The notes beneath the pieces were generated by a model. It was not told the DNA's origin. It saw only the letters and a list, made by a program, of their open reading frames with translations, and did no database searches. Made by a program: the position numbers and the translations under genes. This document shows positions 5,844-40,596 of a stretch of 64,000 nucleotides of DNA, one piece after another. Source of the stretch: Magallana gigas (lineage: Eukaryota); the NCBI RefSeq assembly GCF_963853765.1, contig NC_088857.1, positions 31,868,001 to 31,932,000 of the forward strand, read 5' to 3'. How positions within the stretch are numbered: position 1 is the stretch's first letter; the number at the start of each line of letters is the position of its first letter.

Positions 5844-8800
5844 ATGCGCGATCGACCATTACAACCGTTTTCCCGTATTGTCCACACCTTTGACCTACGG
5901 TGAGTGAACTTAGGAAGTCATTTATCTTGGGTGACTTTAAAACATATAAACCAATTTCTTCACAGGTGTATCATATCACATCAAAGAAAAATATATATTT
6001 GACAGATCTGACAATTTATTTAATCAGTTAATTAACGTTCTTAAAACTATAAAAGTATTCTTATGACAAGTATTTGGTTGATGTACTAATAAATGTGAAT
6101 TATACAACTAACCAACCTATTTTGAATATTTAATCACATCTATGGGAGATCAATCGCCGAGTATACTGCAATATGATAATGTTGTGCAAACAGAGCGCGC
6201 CATCTATCGACCGTGTATTGTACGATGTGGGTTTTATTGTTTTAGGGTATGTATATACATAATTAGACTTCATACTCTACCATTCTGTTCCAACTTCTAC
6301 CAGTCGGAAAACTCATAAACCGTGTTCTATCTTGAGGTCGTCAGCTACTTGAATAATTTTGCTCATATCTATACCCAATATTCATTTGAATTTTATAATA
6401 ACAAGTAAGGTCAACACTAGAACACAGCTTCTCCAATTTATCAGTCAGACTTGCAAACTGCAAGGTGTAAGACGAATTGGGGGCGGTTCTCTCTAACTGC
6501 AATACAGTTGTCTTTGGGGAGAAGGGTCTTTTATACTGATCTCCAGCAAAGTGGCTTCTTCGGTTGTGATCGTATCAGGGGTTTCCAGCGCTGCCGCCAA
6601 TTCCACAGACGAAAACATTCAAGTGGACATCATGACAGAAAACTACGCAGAGTTCGGCAAATCGACGGACCGGTCTCCCATCGTGCCCGAAATCTCTATT
6701 CGAAGCTTTACTTTTCGTGTAACTGAAATCGCTTTAGGACTGGTTGCGTTTTTGGCTGTTGTTGTGTGCATAATATTAGGATCAATGGTCAGCTCTGGTG
6801 TAGGCAATGGCTCAGATTCACCGTCCACAAGCGCTCAAGTTGGTCAAAACCAATTATGTGTATCCCCTCCATGTCTTAAAAGCGCGTCCTATGTAGTTTC
6901 CAATCTCAATACTTCTGTCAAGCCCTGTGATAATTTCTATAAATATGCTTGTGGGCGTTTCAAGATTGAAAATCCTTTGGATCCCGAAACTTCTTCGAGA
7001 ACCGTATACAGTAATATGTATTACCATAATGAAGAGAAACTCAAGAAACTTCTTGAATCCCCCATCGTCCGTAGCCAGGACTATTCCACGGAGCGGAAGT
7101 TGAAGCATTATTTTTCGTCGTGCACTGATACTTACCGGAAAGAGCGTGCTAAGGGATCACCTTTGATCACTAAGGTAATTAACAACATCGGAGGCTGGTA
7201 TGTACTCGGAACCTTCAACAACAACTCCTTTGATTTCCACAATGCCTTTCGGAAGGTCTCTGTCGATTACTGGACGGCAGCTTTCTACACGTTCCGGGTG
7301 GCAACTGACTGGTATGACTGGCATAAGAGAGTCATCGAGGTAATTTTCAGATTTTCATTACAAAAATATTCTATTGTTTTATTTTTTGCGCATTGCTTAT
7401 GTATAAAAATACCATATTTTATATGACAGTTGGACTACGCTGGTATGTCAATGTTTTGGTATTACTATACGGAACCTTCAACTGAAAAGGTTGGTATTAC
7501 ATGTAGTTATTGGTTTTCTTCATTTTTGCGGAGTAAAATTTGCCATGATCGCTTTCTAGCTTTAACAATAAACTATCTATATCTTTTCCAACGAAAGTTA
7601 TTTTTTCAAACAAAACTCTTTTCCAACATCTATGTAGAATCCTCACTTTAGAAACTACATTTTGCAACATGAGTGAGCAATTAATTGTTAACGCATTACT
7701 GATGATACTTATTCCGATGTACAACTGGCTACGAAAAAATACTAACACAAAAGATGCGAACTTATAAACTAAATTTGTAAGATTGTTTCTTTAGTATAGA
7801 AATGATATGAAGACATTCATGAGGCGTCTGGCGAATTTCCTCGTCAGAGATTCGAATATAACTTTGGACAACAATACGAAAAACGCACGTATAGAGACCT
7901 TTATCAATGACGCCTTCACCATAGAGATGAATCTAGCCAATGTAAGTACATGTATAATCCTAATTTGAAATTTGAAATAGATTTTACAGGATTATTTTTT
8001 ATAAACATGTATTAATTTTTTATGTTATTAAGAACAATGTTTTAATGGTTTAAATATATACGGTACTCATTACAAAATTTCAGATCACAAAGAACACAAT
8101 GCCAACGTCGGATCCCCACGCATACGAGAAGAGGGTGTCTATTTCTGACCTCAATACCATGCTTGGTACAGAGGTGGGTGTCCTATCAGTATGTGAGTCC
8201 ATTGTGATATGGAAGACACCCACTTAAGAGAACGCAATCTGTTAATGTATTTAGCATCATTTCTTTTTTAGATTGACTTCGCCACCCATATCCAATACAT
8301 GTTTAACGACGCCAATGTTGGTCCGTCCACAAAAATTGTTTTACGAGAAGCTGATTGGTTGAAAAAGATGAATGACATGATAGGGTCATTGGGGGCCAAT
8401 AAGACAAGGTATTTCGTAGTTTTTTTTTATAATGATATAGTTACACATTAAACAACCAATGCATCTTTCGTGTTAATAATTTTAGTTTAAACACTTAAAC
8501 ATGCCATCTCACTGATAAAGTATCTTGTAAATGAATGACAAAATAATTCTAAAGTTGGTGTTGAATAATGTAATAAAGTGATGTATAATATATTCATCAA
8601 ATGTAAATCTGTAATGGGTGATATCATATAGCAATGTAACTGAGTGTGCGAAATATGATTATATATAATAATTAGCTGTAAGTTGCCGAAAGATAGGACA
8701 ATACCATATAACATAACCTTTTACATGTAAACTTGTAAAGTAAAAAAATGTATAACCATGCGACAGAATGTTGAACAACTACCTGGTCTGGAAGGTGATG

Positions 8801-11800
8801 GATCGCTATGACGTAGAACTTTCCTGGGAGTACGTCCACGCCAGCCGCGAGTTCTACGTAGATAGGTACGGTATCCCGCAGTTCCTGGGAACCTGGCTTT
8901 ACTGTTTCCAAAACATGGATCGGTACCTTGGAGACGCGCTTAGTTCAATGTATGTCAGGGACCATTTCGCTGATAAAAATAAGGAAAAGGTGAGTTGACA
9001 TTTTTAACTCCCTCTTTGTCTTTCCTGTATAATTTTGACCTCCTTTTCATCTTTATCTTTTTTTTTGCGCAGGCTCATGAGATTCTGGACTATGTAAAGG
9101 AGGCATTGATTGACAGCACCATGCAAAACACGTTCATGGATGATGCTACAAAAGCCAGAGCGAAAGCCAAGGTAAGATTGTGTATGGCTATGCTGTTTAT
9201 CGTCTTGCATTTGACTTTGCGGACGATTCACCTCCAGGACAAATAATGAAGGAACTGGTTTTTTTATATGATGTTTAATATTTTTACTTATATGTGATTC
9301 ATTAATCCGTATTCATTTTTTACCCGAACGATTTTATTGGAAATAAAGGGGTTGGATTTATGAGGTTCTAATCCATTTCACACTTTGTTAACAGTTTACA
9401 GTGAACCAGTCTTTAATCTGTGAATGTTCTGTTAAAATCCGATCGCGAATGAGGATTTTACAACGGTTTCGATTTAGAAATTATTGAGTGCTATTGTTAA
9501 AATTTTACGATTTGAAATCTATAAAACGGTGGTTATATTTTCACCATATTGTGTTGTTAATCTTCATTAAAATACAATGTATAAGTGTCTCATACCACTT
9601 TAACATTGTTCAAAAACTGTTTTATCAATTTATCTGTTTAACAGATGCAAGGAAGCTTGGACAAACTTGGCTATCCAGATTTTATGATGAATGACGCGGC
9701 AATGGACAACCTGTACAGTAGTGTAAGTGTCAAAGTCTTCACGTAAGCTAGTTTTAACAAAAATATTTTTGCAGAGACTAACAATGCTATCCTTTTTTTA
9801 CAATGTGCACATTATTCGAATAAATAAAACTTCCTACTTACAATTAGTTGTTTTCACAATAAAAGCGTTTTTGATAATAAAATTTAAGTTCAATCTACAG
9901 TTAAAAACGGTTATAGCGAAGTGCCATGATACCAAGTGGTTTTGATTAGTTAATATACACTATACACGCATATCGCTATATAAAATTGAAAAAGGCTTCG
10001 CTGATGGCGTGATTTGGTTTTAAATGTTCTGCTGTAACCGTGTCATATCATGTTTTCAGTTTTAAGTTCTAACTACACCACATTTCCATGTATCACGTCC
10101 AAACCTTTCATAAAATCTTCCAGCTCAACGTGGACCAGTATGACTATTTCGGAAACCTCCTGAGCGTGAACAACTACATACAGAAGTCGTGGAACAAGAA
10201 ACTGAAGAACCACGTGAACAAAGAAGAGGAGTGGGTGTACCGGACGTACGACACCTTCATGTCTTACTACAACCCCTGGAACGAGCTGCTGGTGCCCGCC
10301 GGACTCCTTCAGTTCCCGTTCTACGACTACACGCTCCCTCACTTCATGAACTTTGGCTCTATGGGAAGCGTTATAGCTCACCATCTTGTCCATGGCATCG
10401 ATCACTCAGGTATTTAGTTCTCATACTAAGGTTTCATGAATGATTGTATTAATTTCATCATTTGATTGATTAATCGTATGTTAGAATAACTTTTCTTCAT
10501 GCTCGGAACAACATGTATCAGAAATTATAATTTACTTCTTTTGAATAGGTTGTTTTACAATTCATGTGAATGTTGCGTTCAAATTCAAAACGTACATGAT
10601 TATCAATACACCACATTGGGGTTCTTTCACCTTCAGGGGGATACTACAATGTGGAAGGCGTCTTTGAGGATTGGTGGAGCAACCAGACGACCAACAAGTG
10701 GATAGACGCCAAGAAGTGTGTGGAGAACTACTACAACAACCAGAGTATGGGTCCATTCACCATCCCAGGACAGACCATTCCTATCAAGGTATGTAGTATT
10801 GCCCTAGACAATTAGAGCAAAAGTGCTTTGTTCTGTGTTCCGAAACTACTTTTCATATTGCTGTGTGAATACATGGGTTTCCGTTTTACATATGATCTTA
10901 TAGAAAGAAATTTTATTAAACAAATACACCAGTTATTCAATTTTAATGTAGGACTTGTTAATCGCTCTTCAACGATACGTTGTAAAGATTTAACAACATC
11001 CTGTTTGAGTCACCTCAGAGCCTATATTTTTATTCTTATCATGTGTCTATGTTCAGGTACCAGTCAATGGATTAAGATGGTCAGCAGAAGCAATGGCTGA
11101 AACTAGTGGAGTCCAGATAGCTTACAAGGTAAACATCCTTATTTACAAACCAACTGATTTCTATCATATCTACGGTACAGTAAGGTTCACTTATTCATTA
11201 ATCAAATGATGCTAGGGATTTTATATGCATTGAACTGGGTGGAATTTATTACTTGTATTTTGTTTTGAAGGCTTACAAGAAATGGGTTCAGAAAAACGGT
11301 GGAGAGAAACTGGCTCCTGGATTAGGTCTGACCAACGACCAGATGTTCTTTGTCTCATATGCGCAGGTATACAGTTGAATGCATGTATCAACCAAAGCTA
11401 ACAATTATCGTATACTGTATATATATGTGTACATATAAAAATAAGTACATGTACATGTATAATGTCCGGGTATGTTCAAATCGAGTCCTTTTGAATTATC
11501 TTGATATGTAATAAACAAATGTTTATTTTGAAAATACCTCTTTTTAAGAAATTGATATTTTAGGTCTATTGAGTGATTCTACCGTTAAACATTAATTTTG
11601 ATTTTTTTACCCTCAGGCTAGCTGCTACAATAGAAATGACAATGTCGCCTATTACAACGCCGTCCGAGGAACAGTGTCAGAAGACATTAGGTAAAATAGA
11701 ACAGAACAATCGGCTTTTTTATTACTTTGTTCATCTGTTCATTTTGGAAAAAAAGCAAAATACGCTATCTTTGAAAAAAATTAAATGGTTGTGAAAAAAA

Positions 11801-11926
11801 AGAAATTTACGTTTCTTTTGCAGAACAAACAGTGCCTTGGCACAGATTAAGGAATTCTCAACAGCATTTAACTGTCCAGCAAAGACGGCCATGAATGCGG
11901 AAGTTAAGTGTGCCATGTATGGATAG
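5844..11926 (+). CDS. Neprilysin/ECE-like M13 family type II membrane protein, copy A, predicted non-catalytic; 821 aa from ATG 5844 or 774 aa from ATG 6632; exons 5844-5899, 6547-7339, 7430-7489, 7795-7941, 8084-8173, 8272-8408, 8767-8989, 9073-9171, 9645-9722, 10124-10409, 10637-10788, 11057-11128, 11271-11366, 11617-11690, 11824-11926
   Basis: All junctions are GT-AG and in frame (2466 nt). N-terminal TM (IALGLVAFLAVVVCIILG), CVSPPC...KPCDNFYKYACG, LGYPD, VPAGLLQFPFY, NFGSMGSVIAHHLVHGID and FNCP..MN..KC match M13 motifs. Exon 1 (5844-5899) is less certain than the rest. Confidence 0.9.
6380..6472 (+). promoter_or_regulatory. Candidate internal promoter and short non-coding exon of M13 (AT-rich box, TCAGTC initiator-like motif 6441-6446, GTAAGA donor 6467)
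   Basis: These motifs and the downstream acceptor (6546) are conserved in all three M13 copies (e.g. TCAGTC 47648, GTAAGA 47674, AG 47743). Confidence 0.4.
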
Positions 11927-13096
11927 AACCAAAAACGGATCCATTTCAATGCAAAAAGTATTACAAACGTCACGTGAAATCATCTGCACACATCAAGTGT
12001 TGGGAATGAAGTTTGCAAGAATAAACTTAAACATTTTGTGAATTGTTTTCAAAACTCACTCCAATTTACACAATTCTAAGCATATATGTATATGATCGTT
12101 TTAATGCCTATATAAAGCATTGTCCATGATATACCCGGTCTACTCAATATTGGTAATTAAATATAAACGCGTGCATTGCATACCCACATTCCTATTATTA
12201 TTTTTTAATAGCGGTGCTAGAGTTATAATATACAATCATATATGAACATGTATATAATAATAAATCTTTATTAAGATACTCTATTCTTAATCCTGACAAA
12301 CCGTATATGTGATTTCTATTACACATTCTCAGGACATTGTACAGGAATTTCAAATAAATTTTTGAAATGTTAATTTGTGTTTTAGTATTCTGTTAATTTT
12401 TATTATTAAAACTAAGTTAAATCAAACATCTTCAACAGTATTTTTAATTTCTAAACTCGTCAATTTTCTGTACTCAGCCACACAAAAACAATGAAGTAAT
12501 ATTAACCACCCTGTCAGCCTCTTGAAGCCATGCATGTTTTTGTGTTTGTACAATTTCAATCAAAGATTGAAAAGATATTTGAAACCGTAAATAAAAATTT
12601 GGCTTGTAAAATCGGTCCCCTTATATACGCTATAAAAGGGTATCCTTTAAAAGTAATTTAACAACTGTTATATATATATTGACAATTTTATTAAGTTAAC
12701 ATAATGGCGCCATATTGAGGATCACAAATGCGCCATACCTCTTCACAAGAGTCAGTTGCCCATGAACTAACAAAAACAATGTGCTAAATGTTCAATATGA
12801 AAACTAGCTACAACTTAAGTCTCTTCATGCGAGAAAGCTCCGAGACCATGCGAGGATCCAGAATTTTTTCAAAAGTGGGTCCAAGGGATAATTATATTGT
12901 TTTGCCGAGGGTAAGGGAGGTTGATATAGGCCTATTTTCTATAATTTTACTGAGTGAATTTAATAATTCTGAGTTACCCAGGTGGGGACCGGATCGACCC
13001 CTTCTTCCTCCCTAGATTCGAGCATGAGGTCTGTAGCTCTACAGAAAAAAGCCGAAAAGATACAGCTCCTCATATAAAGAAATAAAATTTACGACA

Positions 13097-13269
13097 CACA
13101 GTAATGGTATTTAAATCTAGCATATATACTATTTTTTAAACAATGCATATTTATTAACATAAAGTCGCTTATAACTCATATGAGCCTACGCCAATCGTTC
13201 AGGAGCACAAGTCTACAGTGTAGTTATATAATTAGAACAATATTGATACATGTATTTCTATTGCTGCAA
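13097..13269 (+). repeat. ~170-bp diverged direct repeat, left of channel block A (partner 19263-19427; unit B copies 39503-39674 and ~44995-45154)
   Basis: Shared TAATGGTATT..AATGCATATT..TAACTCATATGAGCCTACG(C/T)CAATCGTTCAGGAGCACAAGTCTA..ATATTGATAC(A/G)TGTATTTCTATTGCTGCAA. Confidence 0.75.
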
Positions 13270-13359
13270 ATAAAAAGCTGGGTAAAGTTTTTTTTCTATT
13301 TGTAAAAAACTTCAAATTTAATTCTTTCTTACATTGTACATATACAATTTGTTATCAAT

Positions 13360-13866
13360 ACTATAATTATACATGTACTCTCACATTTTTTTCCTTTGCA
13401 GAGCCTTTTAGATAGTTAAGTTTTGCTATCCAGCAATTGGAATTGGCATTTGGACACAATTATTAAGAATAATTCTCACACTTTTAAGAGTCCTTAAGAG
13501 AGATAAATGAAATTTAGCTATCTGCTAAATTGAATTGTCAATTTGACAAAATTAACGCCATTTCCGTAAAGACAAATACATTTATTCAGACTTGGCCTAA
13601 CTTAATTACAATAAAAGTGTTTGGTGGACCAATTATTGATATTGTATCATAATATTTTAGAGCCCCTAATAAGATAGAATAATGATATTAGGCTATCTGC
13701 TTATTAATTTGAAGTGCTACTTTGACAAATTATAAAGTATTACATGTATACTCGCACATTTTTTAAGAGCCCTTAAGAGAGATTTCTTAAGACGAATTAA
13801 TTGAATTTGGCTATCATCCAATTTGAATTGCCATTTTGACAAAATTATAAAGTATAATTCTCACAC
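13360..13866. repeat. Degenerate ~90-100-bp tandem repeat (GCTATC..AATTGAATTG(C/T)CA(A/T)TT(T)GACAAAATT..TCACAC..AGAGCCCTTAAGAGAGA)
   Basis: About four degenerate recurrences; paralogue at ~39760-40260. Confidence 0.45.
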
Positions 13867-13875
13867 AAATTCATG

Positions 13876-14021
13876 TAAGAAATATTGTAATTTTAGGACG
13901 GGTAATGCTAAATAACCTATTGAGATAGGTAGATGGTTTAATATTCCTGGAGTAAACAGAATTTGTAAATTATGTGCCTGCAATGAAATTGGGGATAAAT
14001 TTCACTATCTTTTCAAATGTA

Positions 14022-14104
<83 letters not shown>

Positions 14105-14256
14105 AGTTCAAGGGTTATATGTTTACCAAAATATTTCATAAGAAATCCAAATGTTGTGTTAAATTTGAAACACTGTTTAATGTCACAAACATAAACCAAC
14201 TTACCAATATTTGTAAACTATTATATACTATATTTTAGAGAGTTAGCTCTCTTGGT
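13876..14256 (+). mobile_element. LINE (non-LTR retrotransposon) ORF2 3' fragment, degenerate
   Basis: Translates FRTGNAK*PIEIGRWFNIPGVNRICKLCACNEIGDKFHYLFKC...LPKYFIRNP, the C-terminal CCHC region typical of LINE ORF2; interrupted by (AT)39. Confidence 0.8.
14025..14102. repeat. (AT)39 microsatellite
   Basis: Direct read; only a few units at the paralogous site ~40431-40440. Confidence 0.95.
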
Positions 14257-14442
14257 AAAATTTACCTATTTACCGCCATTTGTTTAAAGATCAGCATATT
14301 TTGTCGTACTTAGCACATCTTACTTAAAGATATGATAAAATACCATGTTGGACCAATTTGTGATAGTTTGTTTTCTTAATTTATATGACTTTAAAAGAGA
14401 ATTATATAAAAATTGGCCGTTGGCCATTTTCATCGCCTTTTT

Positions 14443-15060
14443 GGGAGTAGATTGTAATCAACTCTCCTATGCAATTACTCAGACAAACCAAAAGTGAAAC
14501 AGTGTTTGGACCTCAGCACAAATCATTGCTGCTGACAAGACTCAGTTCTTGGAAATAATTGATAAATTCGATGTCATGTATGCTAAAGCATTGTTTTTCA
14601 AGGAAACTTATTTATAAATACCTTGAAAAAAGTCAGATTTTAAATGGTACGAACAATTTAAATATTTTTGTAGTCGTATGTATTCCTACGCCAGAGTTCA
14701 ATATACGACGCTCGGCTGTCTCCGTAAATCCCTGTCAGAGATTTACAGTGTCAGCCGAGCGTTTGGTTGAACGAGACTAGAGTTCAATATTGCTTGGATC
14801 CATACAATTTTCGAGAAATATTTCTATTACTGATACATAGTTTGATTGAATTGATTTTATCTTTAAATATTATTTAACATGATTCATATGGGGGTTTCTC
14901 GACATTCTTGTCGAAAATGTCCAAAAATTCATATTACAAAAATGTTCGTAATTCAAATTAGAAACAACATGTACTTGTCATGGAAAATAACATATCATTG
15001 ATTTTAAAATAAATAAACATGGACAAAATCAACTCCCGTCAGTTCTTCCGTACTTTGATT
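14443..15060 (+). mobile_element. Non-autonomous DNA element with sub-terminal IR and internal hairpin (possibly Helentron-associated)
   Basis: 5' GGGAGTAGATT, 3' AAAATCAACTCCC-GTCAGTTCTTCCGTACTTTGATT, internal palindrome CGCTCGGCTGTCTCCGTAAATC...GATTTACAGTGTCAGCCGAGCG, T-rich flanks. Absent at the paralogous site (~40770); second copy at 17574-18167. Confidence 0.65.
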
Positions 15061-16172
15061 TAACCTTTACTACCGCCATATTTTCTCGTAGCCAGCATAA
15101 AGATTTTTTTATTGACGGAGATGGGTAAGAACGTTAGAAGGTTTGTGAAGTTTGCATAACCGATGACCCTAAAGAAATATTAGCCACTTAATTAACAGTA
15201 CTTTTGAAGGCAACATAACCTAGAAATGCGCCTTCAGATCAAAACAGACAATATCTAATATAAATTTAACGATGTGATACATTAACCTGTAAACCTGGAA
15301 ATATCAAATAAAGAGCAGATAATTGTCGCATAAATGCTGCTGGGATAATTAGCACTCATTCAAAAATTTAAAACAGAGAAGAAAAAAGCATATGGTTGTA
15401 GCAATTTAAAAAACATTGGAAGTTTCAGGCACAAAGTTGTTGACGCATGCCTCGTCCGGAGACACAAACTGGTAAAAAAAAATCTATAGTTATAGAAATA
15501 CAATTAGTATTGAAATCTTAGCTTAAATATGACTTTTCAATCTATATTTGGAGTGAGAATACCTACAATGTAGGCATTAAATGAAAAATTATGAAAGAAA
15601 TTTTCTAGAACACTAATGTCATAGAATCTGTGGTTTATGTTGAATATCTGTGCTATGAAGTAAAATGTCATTTTGTACAAATGTGCAATTTGATCAGAAA
15701 GTTTTATAAATTTAGCTGCAGATTGACTCGTGAAAGGTTTTTTTTTGGTCCTGACATTTGCCACGCAACTATTGATGATCAAATTAACAAACCATTTTCA
15801 AATATTTGAATTTAATGAAGTTAAAATTAAAGTTTCTGATTATAAGATTTATCATTTTGAAAAGTTGTATGATAGATTTGCATTTTGATTGTAAAACCGT
15901 ATCAAATGCCTTTCTGCTTTAAAGTATGTACTGATTTTAGTATTTGAGTTTATATGGAGAGAGAGAGATAGTGCATAAATGTCATATTATGTGAGCAAAA
16001 AGTACGTTATTTTCTTTAACGATCGGAGAAAAAAAAGGCACGTAAACAGGAAACAAGTGCGATAGCTGCATTAATTAGTTTTCATTTGTTTCCTTATTTG
16101 GTAAATGATATTAATTGTATATCAAACGATGAGCTCGTCTACAGTGAATACATCACTGCTTTTGGGAGAACA

Positions 16173-17357
16173 ATGAGGGCGGTTTATCTGGTTCTGGCTT
16201 TCTGTCTGCAGCAAGGCGTTGAGGGGTACACCTTAGATCAGGAGACACAGCTCCATGCAAATCTTACCACCGAATATGATCGGAAGATTAGACCTTTTAA
16301 AAATCAAACGGAACCCATACAAATCAGCATGGACTTTTACATGGAAAAACTCAAAGAGTTCTCGGAAAAGGAAAATAAGATAAGCGTCGTGGGATCTCTC
16401 TCTATAGAATGGAAAGATTTTCGTCTCACTTGGGATCCAACAGACTATGATGGCGATCTGAATCAAACATCTCTTTTTGTTTCTGATATATGGGCACCGA
16501 ATTTGTTTTTGTTAAATCCGTATGAAAAACAAACGCCAATTCTTTCAGATGGTACTGCCTGTACTATACAGGCCAATGGATATGTAACATGCCTGCTGGC
16601 TGACAATTTTGAAACAACGTGCAGTGCCGATATTTCGAATTACCCCTTTGATACTCAGATCTGTACATTGAAATTTTATGTTCAAGGATCTTTTGCTTCA
16701 AACACACTTCTCCAAAATGCATCATCAACCATTCGCTTGGACTTATATGAAATCCATGGACTGTGGTATCTAACCGGCACACGTAATTATATTCAAACGT
16801 ATCGGATTCGTGGGATGAGTTGTGAAGTTTTGCAACTTGAACTTAAAATGAAAAGGCGAAACAGCTATTGCGTATATAACATTTTGCTGCCAATCTTTTT
16901 TATAAATCTCATTCAGTTGTTTGTTTTCTTTTTGCCCTTGGAATCAGGCAAGAGAGTTGGTTTTTCCATGAAAGTTCTTTTATCTGTAGTAGTATTTTTC
17001 ACCATCATTCAAAGCAAATTGCCCGAGTTTTCTAAACCAAGTTTATCATCCCTTACTTTTAAACTGTTAGCTGATTTCCTGACTAGTATCTTTATTGTGT
17101 TATTTGTAGTAGTAATAAGCTTCATTTATCATAACAATAATCACGAAAGAATACCCAGTTTTATCAGAGAACATATCGAAAAAACAAAGGAAAAAAATGG
17201 TAATGAAAAAGAACTCAACATTACTTGGAAAGACGTTGCAAAGCTTCTAAATCGATGGGTTAGTAGATTAATTTTCGTTTGTTTGTATTTTAACTTTTCA
17301 TTTTATATGATTTTCAACCAAGTTACTTCTGTAAACGAGGTCGAAATTTCAAAATAA
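16173..17357 (+). CDS. Intronless Cys-loop ligand-gated ion channel subunit (nAChR-like, non-alpha), copy A, 394 aa
   Basis: Single ORF with signal peptide, WKDFRLTWDP, IWAPNLFL, Cys-loop CSADISNYPFDTQIC (C-x13-C), KRR-M1 (NILLPIFF), LPLESG-M2, M3 and M4. No vicinal CC in loop C. Confidence 0.93.
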   Translation: MRAVYLVLAFCLQQGVEGYTLDQETQLHANLTTEYDRKIRPFKNQTEPIQISMDFYMEKLKEFSEKENKISVVGSLSIEWKDFRLTWDPTDYDGDLNQTSLFVSDIWAPNLFLLNPYEKQTPILSDGTACTIQANGYVTCLLADNFETTCSADISNYPFDTQICTLKFYVQGSFASNTLLQNASSTIRLDLYEIHGLWYLTGTRNYIQTYRIRGMSCEVLQLELKMKRRNSYCVYNILLPIFFINLIQLFVFFLPLESGKRVGFSMKVLLSVVVFFTIIQSKLPEFSKPSLSSLTFKLLADFLTSIFIVLFVVVISFIYHNNNHERIPSFIREHIEKTKEKNGNEKELNITWKDVAKLLNRWVSRLIFVCLYFNFSFYMIFNQVTSVNEVEISK

Positions 17358-17573
17358 AAACGTTAGCGTCCATCCAAAATATTTTGAGTCATCTATATAC
17401 AATGAAATTATTATAATTATTTGAACATCAGAGAATTTGTATTTTAAAAAACCCAATACCTCCATAATATTTATTATCATTTTTACTAAGTAATTTCCAC
17501 CCCTTATAATTTTATTTTAAGTTATATTCACTCGTATCATTTATCTTGACTTTGTTCGCTTATTATCATTTTT

Positions 17574-18167
17574 GGGAGTTGATTTTAATCAACTCTCATA
17601 TGCAGTTACTCAGACAAATCGAAAGTGAAACAGTGTTTGGACCTCAGCACATATCATTGCTGCTGACAAGACTTACTTCTTGAAAATAATAGATATATTC
17701 GGTGTAATGTTTGCGAAAGCATTGTTTTTCAAGGAAACTTATTTATAAATACCTTGAAAATAGTCAGATTTTAAATGGTACGAACAATTTAGATATTTTT
17801 TGTAGTCGTACGTATTCCTAGCCAGATTTCAATATAGTCTCGTTCAACTCGGCGCTCGGCTGTCTCCGTAAATCCTTGTCGGAGATTTACGGTGTCAGCC
17901 GAGCGTTTGGTTGAACGAAACCAGAGTTCACTATTGCTTGGATCCATACGAGAAATATCTTTATTACTGATACATAGTTTGATTGAATTAATTTTATCTT
18001 TAAATATTATTTAACATGATTCATATGGGGGTTTCTCGACATTCTTGTCGAAAAAGTCCAACAATTCATATTATAAAAATGTGCGAAATTCAAATTAGAA
18101 ACTATATGTACTTGTCATGCAAAATAACATATCTTTGAATTCCCGTCAGTTCTTCAGTACTTTGATT
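17574..18167 (+). mobile_element. Second copy of the sub-TIR/hairpin non-autonomous element
   Basis: Highly similar to 14443-15060 and in the same orientation; hairpin at ~17834-17924; absent at the paralogous site (~43510). Confidence 0.65.
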
Positions 18168-18272
18168 TCAAATTTTATCTGTTTGTTTTTTAAAGATTTC
18201 AAAAACCAATGGAAATAAAAGACTTTTGAATAATATTTAAATGTTTAAATGACTTGTAGTTATGGGCCTATT

Positions 18273-18274
<2 letters not shown>

Positions 18275-18342
<68 letters not shown>
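18275..18342. repeat. (AT)34 microsatellite
   Basis: Direct read. Confidence 0.95.
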
Positions 18343-18346
<4 letters not shown>

Positions 18347-19857
18347 GTTTCATTTATGTACAATAAATAATAAAGCCATGACAGAAACTGCCAACACGTT
18401 TTCTATACTGTGTTCTGTCGAAATAATTGGTAAACACTAGTTCAGCATCATACAAACATGCAATGCCATCCCATGTTATCTTACAAGCCACTGCTATTAC
18501 ACTGAAGCTTAAACACGCAAAGCTGTTTTAAAATTTTGAATTAAGTATAGAATCTTTAAGCATCATAAAACCCCACAACCCCATGTTTGTTATGAATGAA
18601 GCTTATTGCCGAGGGAAGACAGTCCCATATTTTAAAAACTGACTTGAATTTTTGACCGAAAAAGCACTGTGACAGTTTTTCTGTTCAAAAAAGTATCTTA
18701 GATTAATAACAGGTAATATTTTAACTTTATATCTGATAAAGAGTATGGTCCAAACATTTTTTTTTAAAACCCATAAAAATATTAATATTAATGATAATAG
18801 AATGATTATTATTGAGAAGAAACTCTCTAATGCAATGAAATATTAGCCAGTTTCGTTAATGACTGCTAAATCAGTGCAAGATGTCACTTACGCAGTGCCT
18901 GATGAAAAATAAAAATTTGAAAAATTAACATCTATTTTATGCATATAAAATCGATGACTTTATTTTACGGGAAAGGGTAATCTGAATTTTGGTCGGGATC
19001 GGCCTGTGGCCTCCTTTTTTTATTTAAGTCTGAAAGCTCGGGATCAACATTCTTTTCCAAAAGTTGCTGAATAGAGAGTAGGTTGAAAAATTGTAGGGGA
19101 GAATTTTTGAAATTATATGCTGTAAAACATTGATAGAAATATCAAAATTTTCATCATCATTATAACTATTAATATTAATGACTTTCAACGAAGTGCATCC
19201 TGCTTTTCGGAAAATTACAGTTCCTCAAATAAAAAATTACAATTTAATTTAATTAACAGCATACAGTAGGCCTAATGGTATTCAAATCGTGCATATTTCC
19301 TATTTTAAATAATGCATATTCATTTATAGTACGTCACTTTTAACTCATATGAGCCTACGTCAATCGTTCAGGAGCACAAGTCTAATTAATTAGACCAATA
19401 TTGATACGTGTATTTCTATTGCTGCAATGTATTTAAAGTTGTATTATATACCACTGACATATATCTCTTTATAAGAGGCAGTCATAATAATTTAATTGCC
19501 CAGTTACATTGCTATATCAAACAGCACAATATACTGCCGCTACTTTTCGAGACATTAAATTAATAGTAATATAAAAAGTGAAGTACAACATGCCCATGTT
19601 GTTTATATCGTAGTTCATCATTAATTTAATTTTATCATTGATAAAAGCGTTTCCTCCAGTTAGAACATGGTTTGTGGTTCAGTCAATCAGATTTTCAAAA
19701 ACGATCTTTTTAGTCATCAAAATCCATCCTAGAAAATGATCTTTTGCTTAATTAATCTTTTGAAATAAATGTTAACTCCTATGAATCAAAGAGTTTGTTT
19801 TGAGCAACAGCTAAAACATACAGTTAAAATACATCTTAAAAACCCATTTCTACAATA

Positions 19858-19975
19858 CGAGCGCCAGGACCACCAACCTTCTTGGACTCGCATCATCTGG
19901 GGTCAGCGACCAACAGAGTTCTGTCGTAGCTGATCAGGACAACCTAAATCACGTTCTTGGAGGCCTCATCAACAT
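19858..19975 (-). pseudogene. RPS16: Orphan copy of the RPS16 last exon with its acceptor, nonsense codon
   Basis: Reads [37 protein letters not shown]; TAG at 19946-19944 replaces AAG; 3' end deleted; aligns to 55203-55320. Confidence 0.9.
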
Positions 19976-20639
19976 CTATAATAAAAACAGATTTGTTCAT
20001 GCAATAAAGTTTGCAGAAAACTGTACTCAATTTCTTCTATGAAATCCTGTACAAAACTTTGCCCATTAACTTTACTATAGCGATAGCAATTGATTGCAGA
20101 ATTGTTTATCATGATCGAAATTCGTTCCGACCAAATAACTGGTTTCTCGTATGAAAATATGTAGGTTTTTGACATGGTATTATTTTTTAAAGTTTTTTTA
20201 AATAACACAGAAAGTGTGATATGAATATTCTGTTTATGTGTAAATAAAAATAAAATACCGGTATAAAAATCACATTTCATTATAATTATTCAAAAGAAAA
20301 TCTTAAACAACTAGCAAAAAGATATAAATTGATAGTTTTACTTACCACATGTAGAAATATTTCAGTCCGTTCTACTTCTCAAAACAAAGTCTGCCCATGA
20401 AAAGTATTTATATTCAGATATCCGTTCGAAATTATTATCCTTTGGGATTGTAGTAACATTTACGTGTCCGGTTTAGACAATTGCGTTTTTATGCAATAAA
20501 AAGATGTCGAGTAAAAGTAAAATAAACACATTGTAGGTAGATTGTAACAGTACTTATTAGTATTACCTTTGATGATGTATGACAAGCTGAGCAGACAAGG
20601 CAGTGACATCTTGTTTTAACAGTCATTACAACACACAGT

Positions 20640-21052
20640 CCCTAAAACGCTCTACTTTCCTACTTGAATGGTAAGCGCACTCTGAGCGAACGGTGAGCGC
20701 ACGCTGAATGGAATTTGCAATTGGTGAGCAATTTTAACGGTAATTGGTAAGCGAACGCGGAGCGCAAACGCGAGTGCAAAGTGATCGGTGAACACACAGT
20801 GAACGATATGTGAACGCAAGATGAACGATTTATCTGAAAGCCTTGGGAGTTATTTTTACATTGTATTTCGTCGGTAATCAGGAAAAAATAATAAATAAAC
20901 TACATGTACGACTGTTATCAGCCAAAATATGATATTATCTGACTGAACGATCGATAAGTGAACGCTAAACGAACGGTGAGAGCAAAGTGAATGTTTTGTG
21001 AACGCACGGTGAGCGCACGAAGAAACTAGAACGTTCAGACAGTTATACAGAA
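20640..21052. mobile_element. Interspersed repeat with reiterated GAACGGTGAGCGCAC-like motifs
   Basis: Multiple GTGAGCG/GTGAACG motifs; the paralogue is split into ~46079-46387 and ~47104-47206 by an insertion. Confidence 0.55.
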
Positions 21053-21800: not shown

Positions 21801-21943
21801 CTGTCTTCCCACAAATGTTTATTTAAAAATAAAATTTGGTGTTATGACTAGTCATAACACCAAATTTTATTTTTAAATAAACATTTGTGGGACTAGTCAT
21901 AACACCAAATTTTATTTTTAAATAAACATTTGTGGGAAGACAG
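21801..21943. repeat. Spacerless 86-bp perfect palindrome (21807-21892) with a 45-bp tandem duplication of one arm
   Basis: Centre GACT|AGTC at 21849/21850; direct repeat 21846-21890 = 21891-21935; outer CTGTCTTCCCACA pairs with TGTGGGAAGACAG. Confidence 0.9.

Positions 21944-23121: not shown

Positions 23122-23124
<3 letters not shown>

Positions 23125-23192
<68 letters not shown>
23125..23192. repeat. (TC)34 microsatellite
   Basis: Direct read. Confidence 0.95.
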
Positions 23193-33109: not shown

Positions 33110-34065
33110 TGTTTAGTTAACCCCAACATACAATCAATCAAGATGATATATTTAGAGGACTTTTTATCCTCTGGGATAAAATATCCCAACATGGTGATTC
33201 ATAGGATTTTAAATCCTATAAAAGCCTTTTAGAGGATTATTTATCCTATAAACACCAATGATGGGAGAAAAAATCCCACGGGAGTTTATATCCCACAAAG
33301 ATTTTTTTCTCCCATGGGATTTTAGTGGGGTTTGAGATGGGATGAAAAATCCCACCAAAATCCCATGGGATTTTGATATTTGAGAGACAATTACAAGAAA
33401 ACTAGAGCAATGTGTACATTCATGCTGACATGATAGGATCAAAGGAAAATGTCCCACCAAGATATATAAACAAAAGTAAGCTATGTCCAATGGAAATGGT
33501 AGCTAAAAGCCCGGACTTTGTCATGTCCGGACTTAAATGTCGCACTGTTTAATTTAACTTCATCAGATAATATTTTCGAAAAATATAAAAGAATTTAATT
33601 TATTTTAAAATTGCATTAACATATACATTATTCTATACAACTAACCGATTACTGATTGTGTAACCGGGTACCATCGTTCCGACCAAGTAACCGTTTAACC
33701 AGTTAGAGATTGCCATCCGCACTTTTTTTTTATTACAAAAATACAACAAAACTAACAAAATATCTTAATATTAAGGGTATGTATATACATAAATAACCTA
33801 ATAAAGCTACCATTCTGTTCCAACAGCTACCAGTCAGAGAACTCATAAACCGTGTTCTATCTTGAAGTCGTCAGCTACTTGAATAATTAGCTCATATCTA
33901 TACCCAATATTCATCTGAATTTTATAATAAGAAATAAAGTCAACACTAGAACAAAGCTTCTCCAATTTATCAGTCAGACTTGCAAACTGTAGGGTGTAAG
34001 ACTAAATAGCGAGCGGTTCTCTCTGCAACATTGTGGGGAGAAAGGTCTTTGAAACTGATCTTTAG

Positions 34066-37000
34066 CAAAGTGGCTTCTTCGGTTGTGATAGCATCAGGGG
34101 TTTCCAGTGCTGCCGCCAATTCCACGGAAGAAAACATTCAAGAGGAAACCATGACAGAAAACTACGCAGAGTTCGAAAAATCGACCGAGCGGTTTCCCTA
34201 GGTGCTCGAAATCTCCATTCGTAGCTTCACTTTTCGTGTAAGTGAAATCCCTTTAGGACTGATTGCGATTTTGGCTGTTATTGTGTGCATAATAATAGGA
34301 TCAATGGTCAGTTGACTGGCATAAGAGAGTCATCTGGGTAATCAGATTTTCATTAGAAACATATTTCTGTTGTTTTATTTTTCGCGCTTTGGTAATGAAT
34401 AAAAATATCATTTTTTGTTTGACAGTTGGATTACGCTGGTATGTCAATGTATTGGTATTACTATACGGAACCTTCAACTGAAAAGGATGGTATTAGTTAT
34501 TGGTTTTACTTCATTTTTGCGGAGTAAAATTTGCCATAATCGCTTTCTAACTTTAACAATAAACTATCTAGTTTTTCTTTTTCTAACATAAATGTAGAAT
34601 CCTCACTGTAGAAAGTACATTTTGCAACATAAGTGACTGAGCAATTAGTTGTTAGCGCATTACTTATGGTACTTATTCAAAAGTACAACTGGCTACGAAA
34701 TGAAATTAACACCAAAGATGCGAACTTATGAACTTCATTCATAATTTGTTCCTGTTGTACAGAAACGATATGGAGACATTCATGAGGCGTCTGGCGAATT
34801 CCCTCGTCAGAGATTCGAATATAACTTTGGGCAACAATCCAAAACGGCACGTATAGAGACCTTCATCAACGACGCCTTTACGCCTTTAGAGATGAATTTA
34901 TCCAATGTACGTACACATAATCCTAATTTTAAATTTTAAATAGAATGTACACTATCATTTCTTATAAACATTTAACTTTTTTCTCCAAATTGACATTTCT
35001 ATAAAAGGAATAATATTTTCTATTTTTATGTTGATAAGAACACTGTTTTAATGTTTTACATATCTACGGTACTCATTACAAAATTTCAGATCACAAAGAA
35101 CACAATGCCAACGTCGGACCCCCACGCTTACGAGAAGAGGGTGTCCATATCTGACCTCAATACCATGCTTGGTACAGAGGTGGGTGTCCTATCAGTCTGT
35201 AAGTTCATTTTAAAGCTGATTGGTTGAAAAGGGTGAATGACATGATAGGGTCATTGGGGGCCAATAAGACAAGGTATTTCGTGGGTTTTTTTTAATGATG
35301 ATATAGTTACACATTCAACAACCAATGCTTCTTGCGTGGAAGTTGGATTATTTATAATTTCAGTTTTTTAACACTTACATACCATCTCACTGATAAAGTA
35401 TCTTGTAAATAAATGTAAAAATAATTCTAAAGTTGGTGTTGAATAATGTAATAATGTGATGTATAATATATTCATCAAATGTAAATTTGTAATGGGCGAT
35501 ATCATATAGCAATGTAACTGAGAGTGCGAAATATGATTATATATATATATATATAACATGTATATCACATGCAGAATGTTGAACAACTACCTGGTCTGGA
35601 AGGTGATGGATCCCTATGACGTAGAACTTTCCGGGGAGTATGTCCCCGCCAGCCGCGAGTTTTACGTAGATAGGGTGTGTTCCCGTTGTGCACACATTTG
35701 ATAATTGGGTATAGAGCAATAGGTGTAATTTGTGTTGTGATAGCAATTATAGTCTGCTTTCAGTCAAAGATTTTACCAGGATTTTTTACTTGTGTTTAAT
35801 TATTCATTCATCAGCGCCATGAAACAAGAAATATATAGATATTTTGTTGTGTTTTAGACTTATCTAATAACTAATAACTGTCACCATTTTTTTTCACGTG
35901 ATAAAATAAAGATCATATTAATATTATTAGTCTTAAATTTCCGCTGACTGATAAGAAAAATAAGGATTAGAAGACTTTTACATTTTTGCCCATTTACTTT
36001 TAATATAAAACTCGATGAATTGAGGACAAATTGCTGGTCCCGAGCCAATTGGAAGCTGATTCAGTGGATAATTATATGATAAAGGGGAAAACTACACGGA
36101 CAGTCATGTGGGGTACTCCGTGTCTCTTTTTATAACTTGCATTGTAGCTGCAAAATATGTAAAACGCACGTTTATAATTGGTTGTTTGGTATCAACAGAA
36201 AGATGATTATGAAAAGAAACTGACCTTTATCACAAAATATTTCAATCTTCGAAGTAGCAGCCTTGACAGTAGATCTTATGATCGACATCACCGCTTTAGT
36301 ATATTGCGGGTCACTTTTCTGGATTTTCAAATCAGTAGCTCAATAAATTCCGACAAAAATAATAATTTAAGTACATGTAAATATTGATTCGATATACCTC
36401 AAACTGAAGAAGGTTGAAAATGTTTGAATCAGGTCTACATTTGAAAGGTTTTGTGAAAAAATATTTTCAGTTTTTGAAGCATATAAAAGTGCCTATTTAT
36501 CATCATATCATCATACATTAATTTGTCTAATAGTATTTTCTTCGATTATTCAAGCCACAGCATAAATGAAAATAATTAGCAGCGTTTTCTTTAGACACAT
36601 ATCCTCCATTTATGTAAGCAAAAACAATTAATGAATATTAATATATGATATTTTCTTTTCAAACTTGTAGCTGGAACTGGAACGAGCTGCTGGTGCCCGC
36701 CGGACTCCTTAAGTTCTCGTTCTACGACTACATGCTCCCTCACTTCATGAACTTTGGCTCTATGGGAAGCCATATAGCTCACCATCTTGTTTATGGCATC
36801 GATCACTCAGGTATTTTGTCATCTTAATAAGTTTCAATGAATTATTGTATCAATTTCATCATTTGATTTTTCAATCGTATGTTATAACGACTTTTCTTCA
36901 TTTTGAATTAAAATTATACATAAAGACCTTTTATGACCAGCTGTGTTCAGTGACATGCTAGGAACAACATGTATCGGAAATAATAATTTAATTCGTTGGA

Positions 37001-38398
37001 ATAGGGTGTTTTACAATTCATGTGAATATTTCATTCAAATTCAGAACTTACATAATTATCCATAAAACACATTGAGTTTCTTTCACTTCAGGTGGATACT
37101 ACAATGTGGAGGGCGTGTTTGAGGATTGTTGGAGCAACAGGACGACCAACAAGTGGATAGACGCCAAGAAGTGTGTGGAGAACTACTACAACAACCAGAG
37201 CATGGGTCCATTCACCATCCCAGGACAGACCATTCCTGTCAAGGTCTCTGGTATTGTCCTGGACCATTAGAGCAAACGTGCTTTCTTCCGTGTTCCGAAA
37301 CTATTTTTCATATTGCTGTGTGAATTCCTGGTTTTCCGTTTTATATATGATCTTATAGAATAGAAATTTTATTAAATACACAACTTTTTCAATCTTATTA
37401 AAGTAGGACTTGTTAATCGCTCTTCAACGATACGTTGTAAAGATTTAACAACATCCTGTTTGAGTCACCTCAGAGCCTATATTTTTATTCTTATCATGTG
37501 TCTATGTTCAGGTACCAGTCAATGGATTAAGATGGTCAGCAGAAGCAATGGCTGAAACTAGTGGAGTCCAGATAGCTTACAAGGTAAACATCCTTATTTA
37601 CAAACCAACTGATTTCTATCATATCTACGGTACAGTAAGGTTCACTTATTCATTAATCAAATGATGCTAGGGATTTTATATGCATTGAACTGGGTGGAAT
37701 TTATTACTTGTATTTTGTTTTGAAGGCTTACAAGAAATGGGTTCAGAAGAACGGTGGAGAGAAACTGGCTCCTGGATTAGGTCTGACCAACGACCAGATG
37801 TTCTTTGTCTCATATGCGCAGGTATACAATGTTAATGCATGCATTAACCAAAGCTAGCAGTTACTCGTCGTATACTATATACAATGTATATAAATATAAA
37901 AATAAAAATACATGTAACTATATTGTCCGCGAAGGTCAAAATAGAGTTCTTTTGAAATATCTTGATATACAATAAACAAATGTTTTTTTTGAAAATACCT
38001 CTTTTTATTAATAAAATTTTTATATTTTAGGTGTATTTTGGCGATTCTACTGTTAAACATTAATATTGATTTCGTTTACACTCAGGCTAGCTACTACAAT
38101 AGAAATGACAATGTCGCCTACTACAATGCCGTCCGAGGAACAGTGTCGGAAGACATTAGGTAAAACAGAACAGAACAATCTGCTATTTTATTGCTTTGTT
38201 CATCTGTTCATTTTGAAAAAAAAAACCCCAAAATATGCTTTGATAAAAGTTTAATGGTCCTGAAAATTAAAGCGAAATTTACATACATTTTGCAGAACAA
38301 ACAGTGCCTTGGCACAGATTAAGGAATTCTCAACAGAATTTAACTGTCCAGCAAAGACGCCCATGAATGCGGAAGTTAAGTGTGCCATGTATGGATAG
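34066..38398 (+). pseudogene. M13/neprilysin-like pseudogene, copy B
   Basis: ATG 34151 followed by TAG at 34199-34201; ~520-bp deletion in exon 2; exon 3 donor GT>GA; frameshift in exon 4; 5' part of exon 6 deleted; exon 7 to mid exon 10 replaced by ~1 kb of unrelated DNA; motif reads HHLVY. Exons 11-15 recognisable. Confidence 0.92.
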
Positions 38399-40269: not shown

Positions 40270-40596
40270 TAAGAAATATTGTAAATTTAGAGCGGGTAAT
40301 GCTAAATTACCTATTGAGATAGGTAGATGGTTTAATATTCCTTCCTGGAGAAAACAGAATTTGTAAATTACTAGTATTTGCCTGCAATGAAATTGGGGAT
40401 AAATTTCACTATCTTTTCAAATGTACTGATGTATATATATCCAGTTCAAGGGTTATATGTTTACCAAAATATTTCATAAGAAATCCAAATGTTTTGTTAA
40501 ATTTGAAACACTGTTTAATGTCACAAACATAAACCAACTTACCAATATTTGTAAACTATTAGATACTATATTTTAGAGAGTTAGCTCTCTTGGTAA
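40270..40596 (+). mobile_element. LINE ORF2 3' fragment (unit B paralogue)
   Basis: KKYCKFRAGNAKLPIEIGRWFNIP...; colinear with 13876-14256. Confidence 0.8.

What the first reader, a model, noticed from the sequence alone, without database searches (positions are those of the whole stretch)
16941..16997. Near-identical channel paralogues differ by two charge-gaining changes in the pore: E-1'K and T6'K
Seen: A reads ESGKRVGFSMKVLLS (AAG 16950-16952, AAA 16971-16973); B reads ESGERVGFSMTVLLS (GAG 42683-42685, ACT 42704-42706). The 6' change needs two nucleotide substitutions. Known: by alignment to alpha7 (GEKISLGITVLLS), -1' Glu is the main cation-selectivity ring and 6' faces the lumen. Inference: B is a cation-type subunit, while A places lysines at two pore-facing positions and may be anion-selective, non-conducting or a dominant-negative modulator in heteropentamers, i.e. 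a possible recent excitatory/inhibitory switch. Early decay of A cannot be excluded, but its ORF is intact and two hits at pore-lining sites among 21 changes is notable.
Basis: partly seen in the sequence, partly recalled or inferred. Interest (0 to 1): 0.8.

Follow-up and report, generated by a model that had tools for sequence, protein, structure and literature searches.

The report
Oyster channel paralogue with two pore lysines
One of two tandem, near-identical oyster Cys-loop channel genes has replaced the pore's cation-selecting glutamate and a lumen-facing threonine with lysines, a real change found in no other relative examined, but whether it rewires ion flow or marks a copy drifting out of use is untested.

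Summary
Gene A (16173-17357) reads AAG and AAA at M2 positions -1' and 6'. Gene B (41906-43093) reads GAG and ACT. Both are intronless nAChR-like Cys-loop subunit genes in a ~26 kb segmental duplication of an oyster (Magallana) chromosome.

An outgroup paralogue shows that both lysines arose in A. They are unique among 101 paralogues of this genome and 206 M2 segments of database relatives. The only other carrier is A's counterpart in an independent M. gigas assembly. A-specific 31-mers occur in 19 runs from 10 studies, so this is neither an assembly error nor a private variant.

A's ORF is intact and diverges far less than its flanks (3.2% against 8.4%, no frameshift). A few reads and one contig from RNA libraries are A-type.

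The selective regime on A's own branch is ambiguous: 12 nonsynonymous to 5 synonymous changes, omega about 0.64, not distinguishable from 1. A lacks the Pro-Ala motif of known anion-selective relatives. A and B both lack the canonical ACh-binding Trp and Tyr and the vicinal Cys pair.

My best reading (0.4) is a maintained subunit that lowers or abolishes cation conduction, most plausibly in heteromers with B. Early loss of function is nearly as likely (0.33). An excitatory-to-inhibitory switch is unsupported (about 0.1).

The parts
16173..17357 (+). Gene A: intronless Cys-loop (nAChR-like, non-alpha) subunit, 394 aa plus stop, signal peptide MRAVYLVLAFCLQQGVEG
   Evidence: ORF. Pfam PF02931 and PF02932. 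AF2 model pLDDT 93.6 with M1-M4. Foldseek TM 0.84 to muscle nAChR chains.
16950..16952 (+). Codon AAG = Lys260, M2 position -1' (the intermediate-ring position, Glu in relatives)
   Evidence: Derived relative to B and outgroup L003. Unique among 101 paralogues.
16971..16973 (+). Codon AAA = Lys267, M2 position 6' (Thr in relatives); two nucleotide changes from ACT
16950..17018 (+). M2 pore helix of A (residues 260-282); 9' Leu, 13' Val and 20' Ser unchanged
   Evidence: DSSP on the model, H260-282. M2 census.
16620..16664 (+). Cys-loop C150-x13-C164 with YPFD, intact in A and identical in B
   Evidence: Translations. Invariant columns.
41906..43093 (+). Gene B: paralogue of A, 395 aa plus stop, 95% amino-acid identity to A
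   Evidence: 99.7% identical to M. gigas UniRef entry P0036.
42683..42685 (+). Codon GAG = Glu, -1' of B (ancestral state)
42704..42706 (+). Codon ACT = Thr, 6' of B (ancestral state)
16422..16790 (+). Codons 84-206 of A, nearly identical to B (B coordinates 42155-42523): probable gene-conversion tract
   Evidence: dS is 0.012 here, against 0.20 in codons 1-83 and 0.17 to the outgroup. The longest difference-free run is 258 nt, P = 0.003.
6241..20940 (.). Segmental duplication unit 1 (M13-peptidase-like exon plus gene A)
   Evidence: Self-BLAST. Flanks are 8.4% diverged with 0.11 indels per substitution.
33582..46385 (.). Segmental duplication unit 2 (contains gene B). A partial third unit at 47249-53346 has no channel gene.
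   Evidence: Self-BLAST. tblastn finds only two channel copies in the window.

Best explanation
A and B are tandem paralogues of the bivalve-expanded, intronless nAChR-like Cys-loop family. They still exchange sequence by gene conversion. B keeps the family's cation pore: -1' Glu, 0' Arg, 6' Thr, 9' Leu.

In A, a haplotype block running from M1 to just after M3 has changed. It fixed E-1'K and T6'K in the pore, and K321N, K322N and R329S just after M3. The change at -1' reverses the charge of the ring that dominates cation conduction in nAChRs. The change at 6' adds a second basic ring inside the lumen.

Shown here: the lysines are real and derived, they are present in different individuals, the ORF is maintained, and transcription is low.

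Inferred: A homopentamers would conduct cations poorly or not at all. A's likely role is as a ring-charge-tuning or conductance-suppressing subunit in heteromers with B-type subunits. Such heteromers would have lower cation conductance and Ca2+ permeability. Co-assembly is plausible because ECD residues 84-206 of A and B are identical.
For: - Polarity and uniqueness of the lysines.
- Independent M. gigas protein P0039 keeps both lysines and the whole A block.
- A-specific words are held fully by 19 runs from 10 studies under two organism labels.
- The ORF is constrained. CDS divergence is 3.2% with one in-frame indel. Flanks are 8.4% diverged with 65 indels in 6.7 kb. A CDS evolving neutrally since the duplication would be expected to carry about 5-6 indels, giving P(no frameshift) of about 0.01-0.1.
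- Pairwise dN/dS between A and B is 0.34.
- RNA evidence. In polyA run X45, 2 of 3 reads at 16950 and 2 of 2 at 16985 are A-type. All of its roughly 14 fragments lie in one orientation. RNA-library run X28 holds an A-type contig over 17020-17180 at depth 2.4, against 13.7 for B-type.
- Literature. In muscle AChR the open-channel potential falls linearly with each -1' charge removed, and a fully neutral ring gives almost no current. A single beta E-1'K subunit still assembles and gives ACh currents (PMC2217203). Natural gamma and epsilon subunits carry Gln at -1' (PMC2233820).
Against: - A's own branch has 12 nonsynonymous to 5 synonymous changes (omega about 0.64), not different from neutral (P = 0.28). 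B's branch has 5 to 7 (omega 0.19, P = 0.005).
- A-derived changes are random with respect to family conservation (mean percentile 0.49).
- The two A alleles differ at 6 residues, against 1-2 between B alleles.
- Gene conversion from B could keep A's ORF open without any selection on A.
- A-specific RNA evidence amounts to two reads and one low-depth contig. Run X44 shows mixed read orientation.
- No ligand, tissue, partner or current is known.
Confidence: 0.4

Rival explanations
1. Relaxed constraint or early non-functionalisation. A is a redundant young duplicate in a birth-and-death family. The two lysines are damaging hits tolerated because B supplies the function. The ORF is still open through chance, recent onset of decay, or repair by gene conversion.
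For: - A-branch omega of about 0.64 is not distinguishable from 1.
- A's substitutions hit conserved and variable columns alike. Three of seven scoreable hits fall in the top 18% most conserved columns.
- There is more amino-acid variation between A alleles than between B alleles.
- A-type depth in RNA libraries is lower than B-type.
- Jiao et al. report more unexpressed, pseudogene-like members among intron-poor oyster nAChR genes (PMC6896357).
- A gene-conversion tract covers codons 84-206.
Against: - There is no stop or frameshift in either independent A allele, although flanking DNA accumulates 0.11 indels per substitution.
- Nonsynonymous divergence is well below the flank rate.
- The same K/K block is kept in many individuals under two organism labels.
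- Some A-type RNA is present.
Confidence: 0.33
2. True charge-selectivity inversion. Rings of Lys at -1' and 6', next to 0' Arg, make A homomers or A-rich heteromers anion-selective. This would be a route to inhibition different from the Pro-Ala route.
For: - Electrostatics at -1' dominate selectivity. GlyR A-1'E alone makes a predominantly cation-selective channel (PMC2233820).
- Molluscan and flatworm nAChR-type channels have become anion-selective before (PMC4055736; PMC13174522).
- The A/B clade has already lost the acidic 20' ring (Ser), so -1' is the only acidic ring inside M2.
Against: - Every characterised anion-selective member uses Pro-Ala at -2'/-1'. A keeps Gly at -2' with no insertion.
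- In alpha7, neutralising -1' alone did not invert selectivity. It also needed additional mutations and it reduced currents severely (as summarised in PMC2217203).
- Five buried lysines at 6' may be deprotonated or may occlude the pore.
- No functional data exist.
Confidence: 0.1
3. Functionally near-silent change. The Lys side chains snorkel away from the permeation path or are deprotonated, so A remains a (weaker) cation-channel subunit and the change is nearly neutral.
For: - The adjacent 0' Lys/Arg ring of nAChRs hardly interacts with permeant ions although it is next to -1' (PMC2217203).
- From my own knowledge, not checked here because the papers are not held: Cymes and Grosman report alternative rotamers of -1' side chains and large pKa down-shifts of lysines engineered into M2.
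Against: - -1' Glu is kept in 96 of 101 paralogues and in 201 of 206 database M2 segments, and no member has a basic residue at 6'. This argues that these sites are not free to vary.
- Merely removing -1' charge lowers the pore potential and conductance (PMC2217203).
Confidence: 0.12
4. Artefact. The lysine codons are assembly or sequencing errors, or A and B are two haplotypes of one locus falsely assembled in tandem.
For: Oyster genomes are highly heterozygous, and false duplications are known in older assemblies (my own knowledge).
Against: - The same K/K block occurs in an independent M. gigas annotation that also has B-type genes.
- A-specific 31-mers occur in 19 runs from 10 studies.
- Flanks differ by 8.4% with many indels and different repeat insertions, far above allelic divergence.
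- The assembly has 29 contigs for 564 Mb.
Confidence: 0.03

Closest known systems
Expanded intronless, tandem nAChR-like genes of bivalves (Jiao et al. 2019, PMC6896357)
   Same: A and B are intronless, lie in a tandem or segmental duplication, and have the LBD plus channel-domain architecture. More than 100 paralogues exist in this genome. The UniRef name is 'neuronal acetylcholine receptor subunit alpha-6'.
   Different: That paper does not analyse pore residues. The K-1'/K6' pair is not described there. It is unique among the 101 paralogues examined here.
Engineered intermediate-ring mutants of muscle nAChR (Imoto 1988; Wilson et al. 2000, PMC2217203), including beta E252K
   Same: The position (-1') is the same, and for beta E252K so is the substitution (Glu to Lys). 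One Lys-bearing subunit still assembles and gives currents. Conduction scales with ring charge.
   Different: Those are laboratory mutants of one subunit in a heteromer. A is a natural gene, carries a second Lys at 6', and its partners are unknown.
Natural ring-charge variation in muscle nAChR: gamma and epsilon subunits with Gln at -1' (PMC2233820 introduction)
   Same: It is a precedent for a subunit that lacks the -1' carboxylate and tunes a heteromeric cation pore.
   Different: Gln is neutral whereas Lys is basic. No vertebrate subunit has a basic 6' residue (my own knowledge).
Anion-selective nAChR-type channels of Lymnaea and Schistosoma (van Nierop 2005; MacDonald 2014, PMC4055736)
   Same: They are lophotrochozoan or platyhelminth nAChR-family members that lost the -1' Glu and changed ion selectivity.
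   Different: They use a Pro-Ala motif. A has Gly-Lys. They keep ACh-binding residues (SmACC-1 has YxCC). A and B do not.
Cephalopod chemotactile receptors (for example squid CRB1, PDB 8eiz)
   Same: They are diverged molluscan nAChR-like receptors without canonical ACh binding. CRB1 matches A at E = 4.9e-22. A preprint reports mixed selectivity motifs in that clade (PMC13174522).
   Different: A matches classical nAChR chains better (E = 4.6e-34). [quoted passage not shown] No tree was built here.

Membership tests
Pentameric Cys-loop ligand-gated ion channel subunit | Neur_chan_LBD plus Neur_chan_memb domains above the Pfam gathering score | tested here: met
   For A, PF02931 scores 121 bits (cut-off 26) and PF02932 scores 46.5 bits (cut-off 28.1). 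B gives similar values.
Pentameric Cys-loop ligand-gated ion channel subunit | Cys-x13-Cys loop and four transmembrane helices in an nAChR-like fold | tested here: met
   C150 and C164 are present. The AF2 model has pLDDT 93.6 with helices 230-253, 260-282, 293-319 and 352-393. Foldseek TM is 0.84 to human muscle nAChR.
nAChR alpha subunit (as the automatic name 'alpha-6' implies) | Vicinal Cys-Cys in loop C (YxCC) | tested here: not met
   There is no CC pair anywhere in the loop C region of A or B (translations).
Canonical ACh-binding principal face | Loop A Tyr and loop B Trp (cation-pi) conserved | tested here: not met
   In the HMMER alignment to human alpha3 (6pv7_A), loop A Tyr aligns with Leu and loop B Trp aligns with Gln. 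The wider family consensus keeps a Trp there, as WGY.
Cation-selective pLGIC pore signature | Glu at -1' (intermediate ring) preceding a basic 0' | tested here: not met
   A has Lys at -1'. B, L003 and 96 of 101 paralogues meet this feature.
Anion-selective pLGIC pore signature | Pro-Ala at -2'/-1' before 0' Arg | tested here: not met
   A reads S-G-K-R with Gly at -2' and no insertion. The motif definition comes from PMC4055736.
Bivalve intronless tandem nAChR expansion | Single-exon CDS, tandem arrangement, many lineage-specific paralogues | tested here: met
   Both genes have uninterrupted ORFs. They lie in a ~26 kb segmental duplication. The genome gives 105 matches, mostly open frames.
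Cephalopod chemotactile receptors | Placement inside the CR clade; gating by hydrophobic contact ligands | not tested
   The only evidence is a pairwise match to CRB1 at E = 4.9e-22, weaker than the match to nAChR chains. No phylogeny or ligand data were obtained.

The most novel reading that the evidence does not exclude
A is a naturally evolved pLGIC subunit that inverts or abolishes cation selectivity through lysine rings at -1' and 6', not through the Pro-Ala motif. It arose within a still-converting tandem pair. The A/B pair would then be a natural before-and-after experiment on how few substitutions switch the sign or silence a Cys-loop channel.
Probability: 0.1. Interest if true: 0.7.

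Novelty: new variant of a known kind. Interest (0 to 1): 0.4.

Why it matters
Charge selectivity of Cys-loop channels has been mapped largely with engineered mutants. All known natural cation-to-anion transitions in the nAChR branch use one motif, Pro-Ala.

Here a natural, intact and transcribed gene has a basic residue at the main selectivity ring and a second one inside the lumen. It sits next to a 95%-identical sister with the ancestral pore. The pair offers a ready-made, minimal test of how ring charge sets conductance and selectivity. It also tests whether bivalve receptor expansions generate silencing or modulatory subunits.

If A is simply decaying, the pair instead illustrates how young duplicates in a birth-and-death family lose their pore first, while gene conversion keeps the rest intact.

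Tried and rejected
- The look-up of encoding contigs for P0039 was busy on the first try and then returned no record. No DNA of the second A allele was available, so no allele-level dN/dS could be computed.
- Papers not held: van Nierop 2005 and Cymes and Grosman 2016 and 2008. Their content is cited only as my own knowledge or through papers that summarise them.
- The search of earlier findings by place and by words returned nothing.
- A region-restricted word search designed to pull out other proteins with K at these sites found only E/T-type clusters.
- Complex prediction was not run. Residues 84-206 of the ECD are identical between A and B, so a predicted A-B interface would add nothing, and a pentamer exceeds the size limit.
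- Gene A and gene B as false haplotype duplicates was considered and rejected (see rivals).
- The upstream ATG of B (41870), lost in A, was considered and dismissed as irrelevant. UniRef models and the signal peptide start at the shared Met (16173 / 41906).

Full report
**What is there**

The window is a 64 kb piece of chromosome-scale contig C5 (31.868-31.932 Mb) of a 564 Mb oyster genome. UniRef names of near-identical proteins point to Magallana (Crassostrea) gigas or a very close relative. B is 99.7% identical to M. gigas entry P0036.

Two uninterrupted ORFs encode Cys-loop receptor subunits: A at 16173-17357 (394 aa) and B at 41906-43093 (395 aa). Both have Neur_chan_LBD and Neur_chan_memb domains. 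They lie in a segmental duplication, units 6241-20940 and 33582-46385. A partial third unit at 47249-53346 has no channel gene.

An AlphaFold2 model of A is confident (pLDDT 93.6, pTM 0.84). It shows the beta-sandwich ECD, M1 at 230-253, M2 at 260-282, M3 at 293-319, a short post-M3 helix and a long MA-M4 helix. Its best structural matches are muscle, Torpedo and alpha7 nAChR chains, with TM-scores up to 0.84.

**Check of the observation**

The codons are as reported. A gapless HMMER alignment to Torpedo and human beta1 chains puts K260 on the intermediate-ring Glu (-1') and K267 on 6'.

A and B differ at 38 of 1182 aligned nucleotides, by 20 amino-acid substitutions and by one codon indel. 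The 6' change (ACT to AAA) takes two adjacent substitutions. Three other codons of the pair also carry two differences, so that alone is not unusual.

**Polarity and uniqueness**

The nearest outgroup paralogue, L003 on contig C2 (89% identical), has Glu and Thr, so both lysines arose on A's branch.

I extracted M2 from 101 of the 105 genome matches. Position -1' is E in 96, D in 2, absent in 2 and K in 1. Position 6' is T in 74, A in 17, S in 3, N in 3, G in 2 and K in 1. A is the only K in both columns.

Among 206 M2 segments of 193 database proteins, K at either site occurs only in P0039. That set includes the 148 nearest 50%-cluster representatives from a full HMMER scan. A word search centred on A's M2 found no other K/K cluster.

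**Not an error or a private variant**

P0039 (UniRef A0A8W8NJF3, M. gigas, another assembly) is 98% identical to A. It carries both lysines and the rest of the A-specific block: I244, N321, N322, S329, I331 and the missing Leu.

A 96-nt stretch in which every 31-mer is A-specific is held completely by 19 runs from 10 studies dated 2012-2025, under two organism labels.

The flanks of A and B differ by 8.4% with 65 indel events in 6.7 kb, and they carry different repeat insertions. A and B are therefore paralogues, not haplotypes.

**Expression**

Evidence is thin but positive.
- In polyA RNA run X45, with about 1% of the run sampled, 25 reads (about 14 fragments) were laid. All have the first mate on the minus strand, as expected for sense transcripts in a stranded library and unlike DNA contamination (P about 1e-4).
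- In X45, 2 of 3 reads at 16950 and 2 of 2 reads at 16985 carry A's letters. B and the C2 paralogue both differ at these positions.
- In RNA-library run X28, a 161-nt contig over 17020-17180 is A-type. It shows 3 differences where B-type would show 12. It has T at 17172, as implied by P0039. Its depth is 2.4, against 13.7 for the B-type contig.
- Caveats: run X44 had only five reads, in mixed orientation. Contigs cannot prove transcription. Run X18 laid nothing.

**Selection**

Pairwise dN/dS between A and B is 0.34, similar to each copy against the outgroup (0.34 and 0.27).

Divergence is mosaic. dS is 0.20 in codons 1-83, 0.012 in codons 84-206 and 0.058 in codons 207-395. The difference-free run of 258 nt has P = 0.003 under a uniform model, while synonymous divergence to the outgroup in that tract is normal (0.17). 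This indicates gene conversion. P0038, from the other assembly, is a chimera with A's N-terminus and B's remainder.

Polarised counts are as follows.

| Branch | Nonsynonymous | Synonymous | omega | Test against neutrality |
|---|---|---|---|---|
| A | 12 | 5 | about 0.64 | P = 0.28 |
| B | 5 | 7 | about 0.19 | P = 0.005 |

The difference between the two branches is not significant (Fisher P = 0.15; relative-rate P = 0.09).

A-derived changes fall at random with respect to conservation across 94 paralogues (mean percentile 0.49). The -1' column is in the top 5% most conserved and the 6' column in the top 13%.

Against full neutrality, the CDS is 3.2% diverged with one in-frame indel. The immediately adjacent 1.1 kb upstream and 130 nt downstream are 9-10% diverged with frequent non-triplet indels. 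A neutrally evolving A would be expected to hold several frameshifts, giving P of about 0.01-0.1 for none. Gene conversion from B weakens this argument.

**What the pore change should do**

This is inference from established work.
- In mouse muscle AChR, the open-pore electrostatic potential near -1' is about -230 mV with four Glu. It rises by about 57 mV per charge removed.
- A fully neutral ring gave almost no current. A single beta E252K subunit still gave ACh currents, although unstable ones (PMC2217203).
- GlyR A-1'E alone makes a mainly cation-selective channel, so charge at -1' prevails over 0' Arg (PMC2233820).
- Known anion-selective nAChR-type channels of Lymnaea and Schistosoma replace the Glu with Pro-Ala (PMC4055736). 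A does not: it reads S-G-K-R.
- The A/B clade has also lost the acidic 20' ring (Ser). That leaves -1' as the only acidic ring inside M2, and A has reversed it.

A homomers should therefore be poor cation conductors. Whether they pass anions is open. A few A subunits in a B-type pentamer should lower conductance and Ca2+ permeability.

The same A block also lost three basic residues just after M3 (K321N, K322N, R329S). The net charge on the cytoplasmic face is thus roughly conserved. I note this but cannot interpret it.

**What these receptors are not**

The automatic name 'alpha-6' is misleading. There is no vicinal Cys pair. Aligned to human alpha3, loop A Tyr is Leu and loop B Trp is Gln, although the wider family consensus keeps that Trp.

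The ligand is therefore unknown. The phrase 'excitatory/inhibitory switch' presupposes a synaptic role that nothing here supports.

**Verdict**

| Reading | Weight |
|---|---|
| Maintained subunit with a cation-repelling pore, probably modulatory | 0.40 |
| Early loss of function | 0.33 |
| Near-silent change | 0.12 |
| Genuine anion switch | 0.10 |
| Artefact | 0.03 |

This is a new variant within a known, very large family. It is interesting mainly as a natural minimal pair for testing pore electrostatics.

Noticed in passing
L067 (G000:C7:33577613-33578581) and L088 (G000:C7:33572433-33573356): Two neighbouring paralogues lack the -1' Glu through a one-residue deletion (D-Q-G-R-V and E-E-G-R-V in place of S-G-E-R-V). 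They are further natural departures from the cation-pore signature in this genome.
   Followed up: no
window 6551-7426 and 47709-48605 (+): The duplication units also carry a first exon of an M13 (neprilysin-like) peptidase (PF05649, E about 1e-23). UniRef entries P0012 and P0014 appear to join the channel's ligand-binding domain to residues of this peptidase exon, from an alignment fragment. This is probably a gene-model error or a read-through.
   Followed up: partly
P0038 (UniRef A0A8W8NC67, M. gigas) against window genes A and B: This protein from another assembly is a chimera. Residues 1-22 are A-type (A3, Q13, T20, D22) and the rest is B-type with Glu and Thr in M2. It points to recombination or gene conversion, or to copy-number variation of this array between individuals.
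   Followed up: partly
window 14438-15004 and 17569-18141: A ~570 bp direct repeat (89% identity) brackets gene A. One copy is about 1.2 kb upstream and the other about 0.2 kb downstream. No counterpart flanks gene B. It may be a mobile-element insertion specific to unit 1.
   Followed up: no
M2 position 20' in L001-L004 (window A and B; C2:60.98-61.00 Mb): The A/B/L003/L004 clade has Ser at 20', followed by Lys at 21'. Most paralogues have Asp or Glu at 20' (68 of 101). The outer acidic ring was therefore already lost before A changed its -1' ring.
   Followed up: partly
window 20940-33582: About 12.6 kb separates duplication units 1 and 2 and has no counterpart between units 2 and 3, which are adjacent. 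It contains internal repeats (32015-33114) and an inverted match, 21094-21369 against 33549-33274.
   Followed up: no
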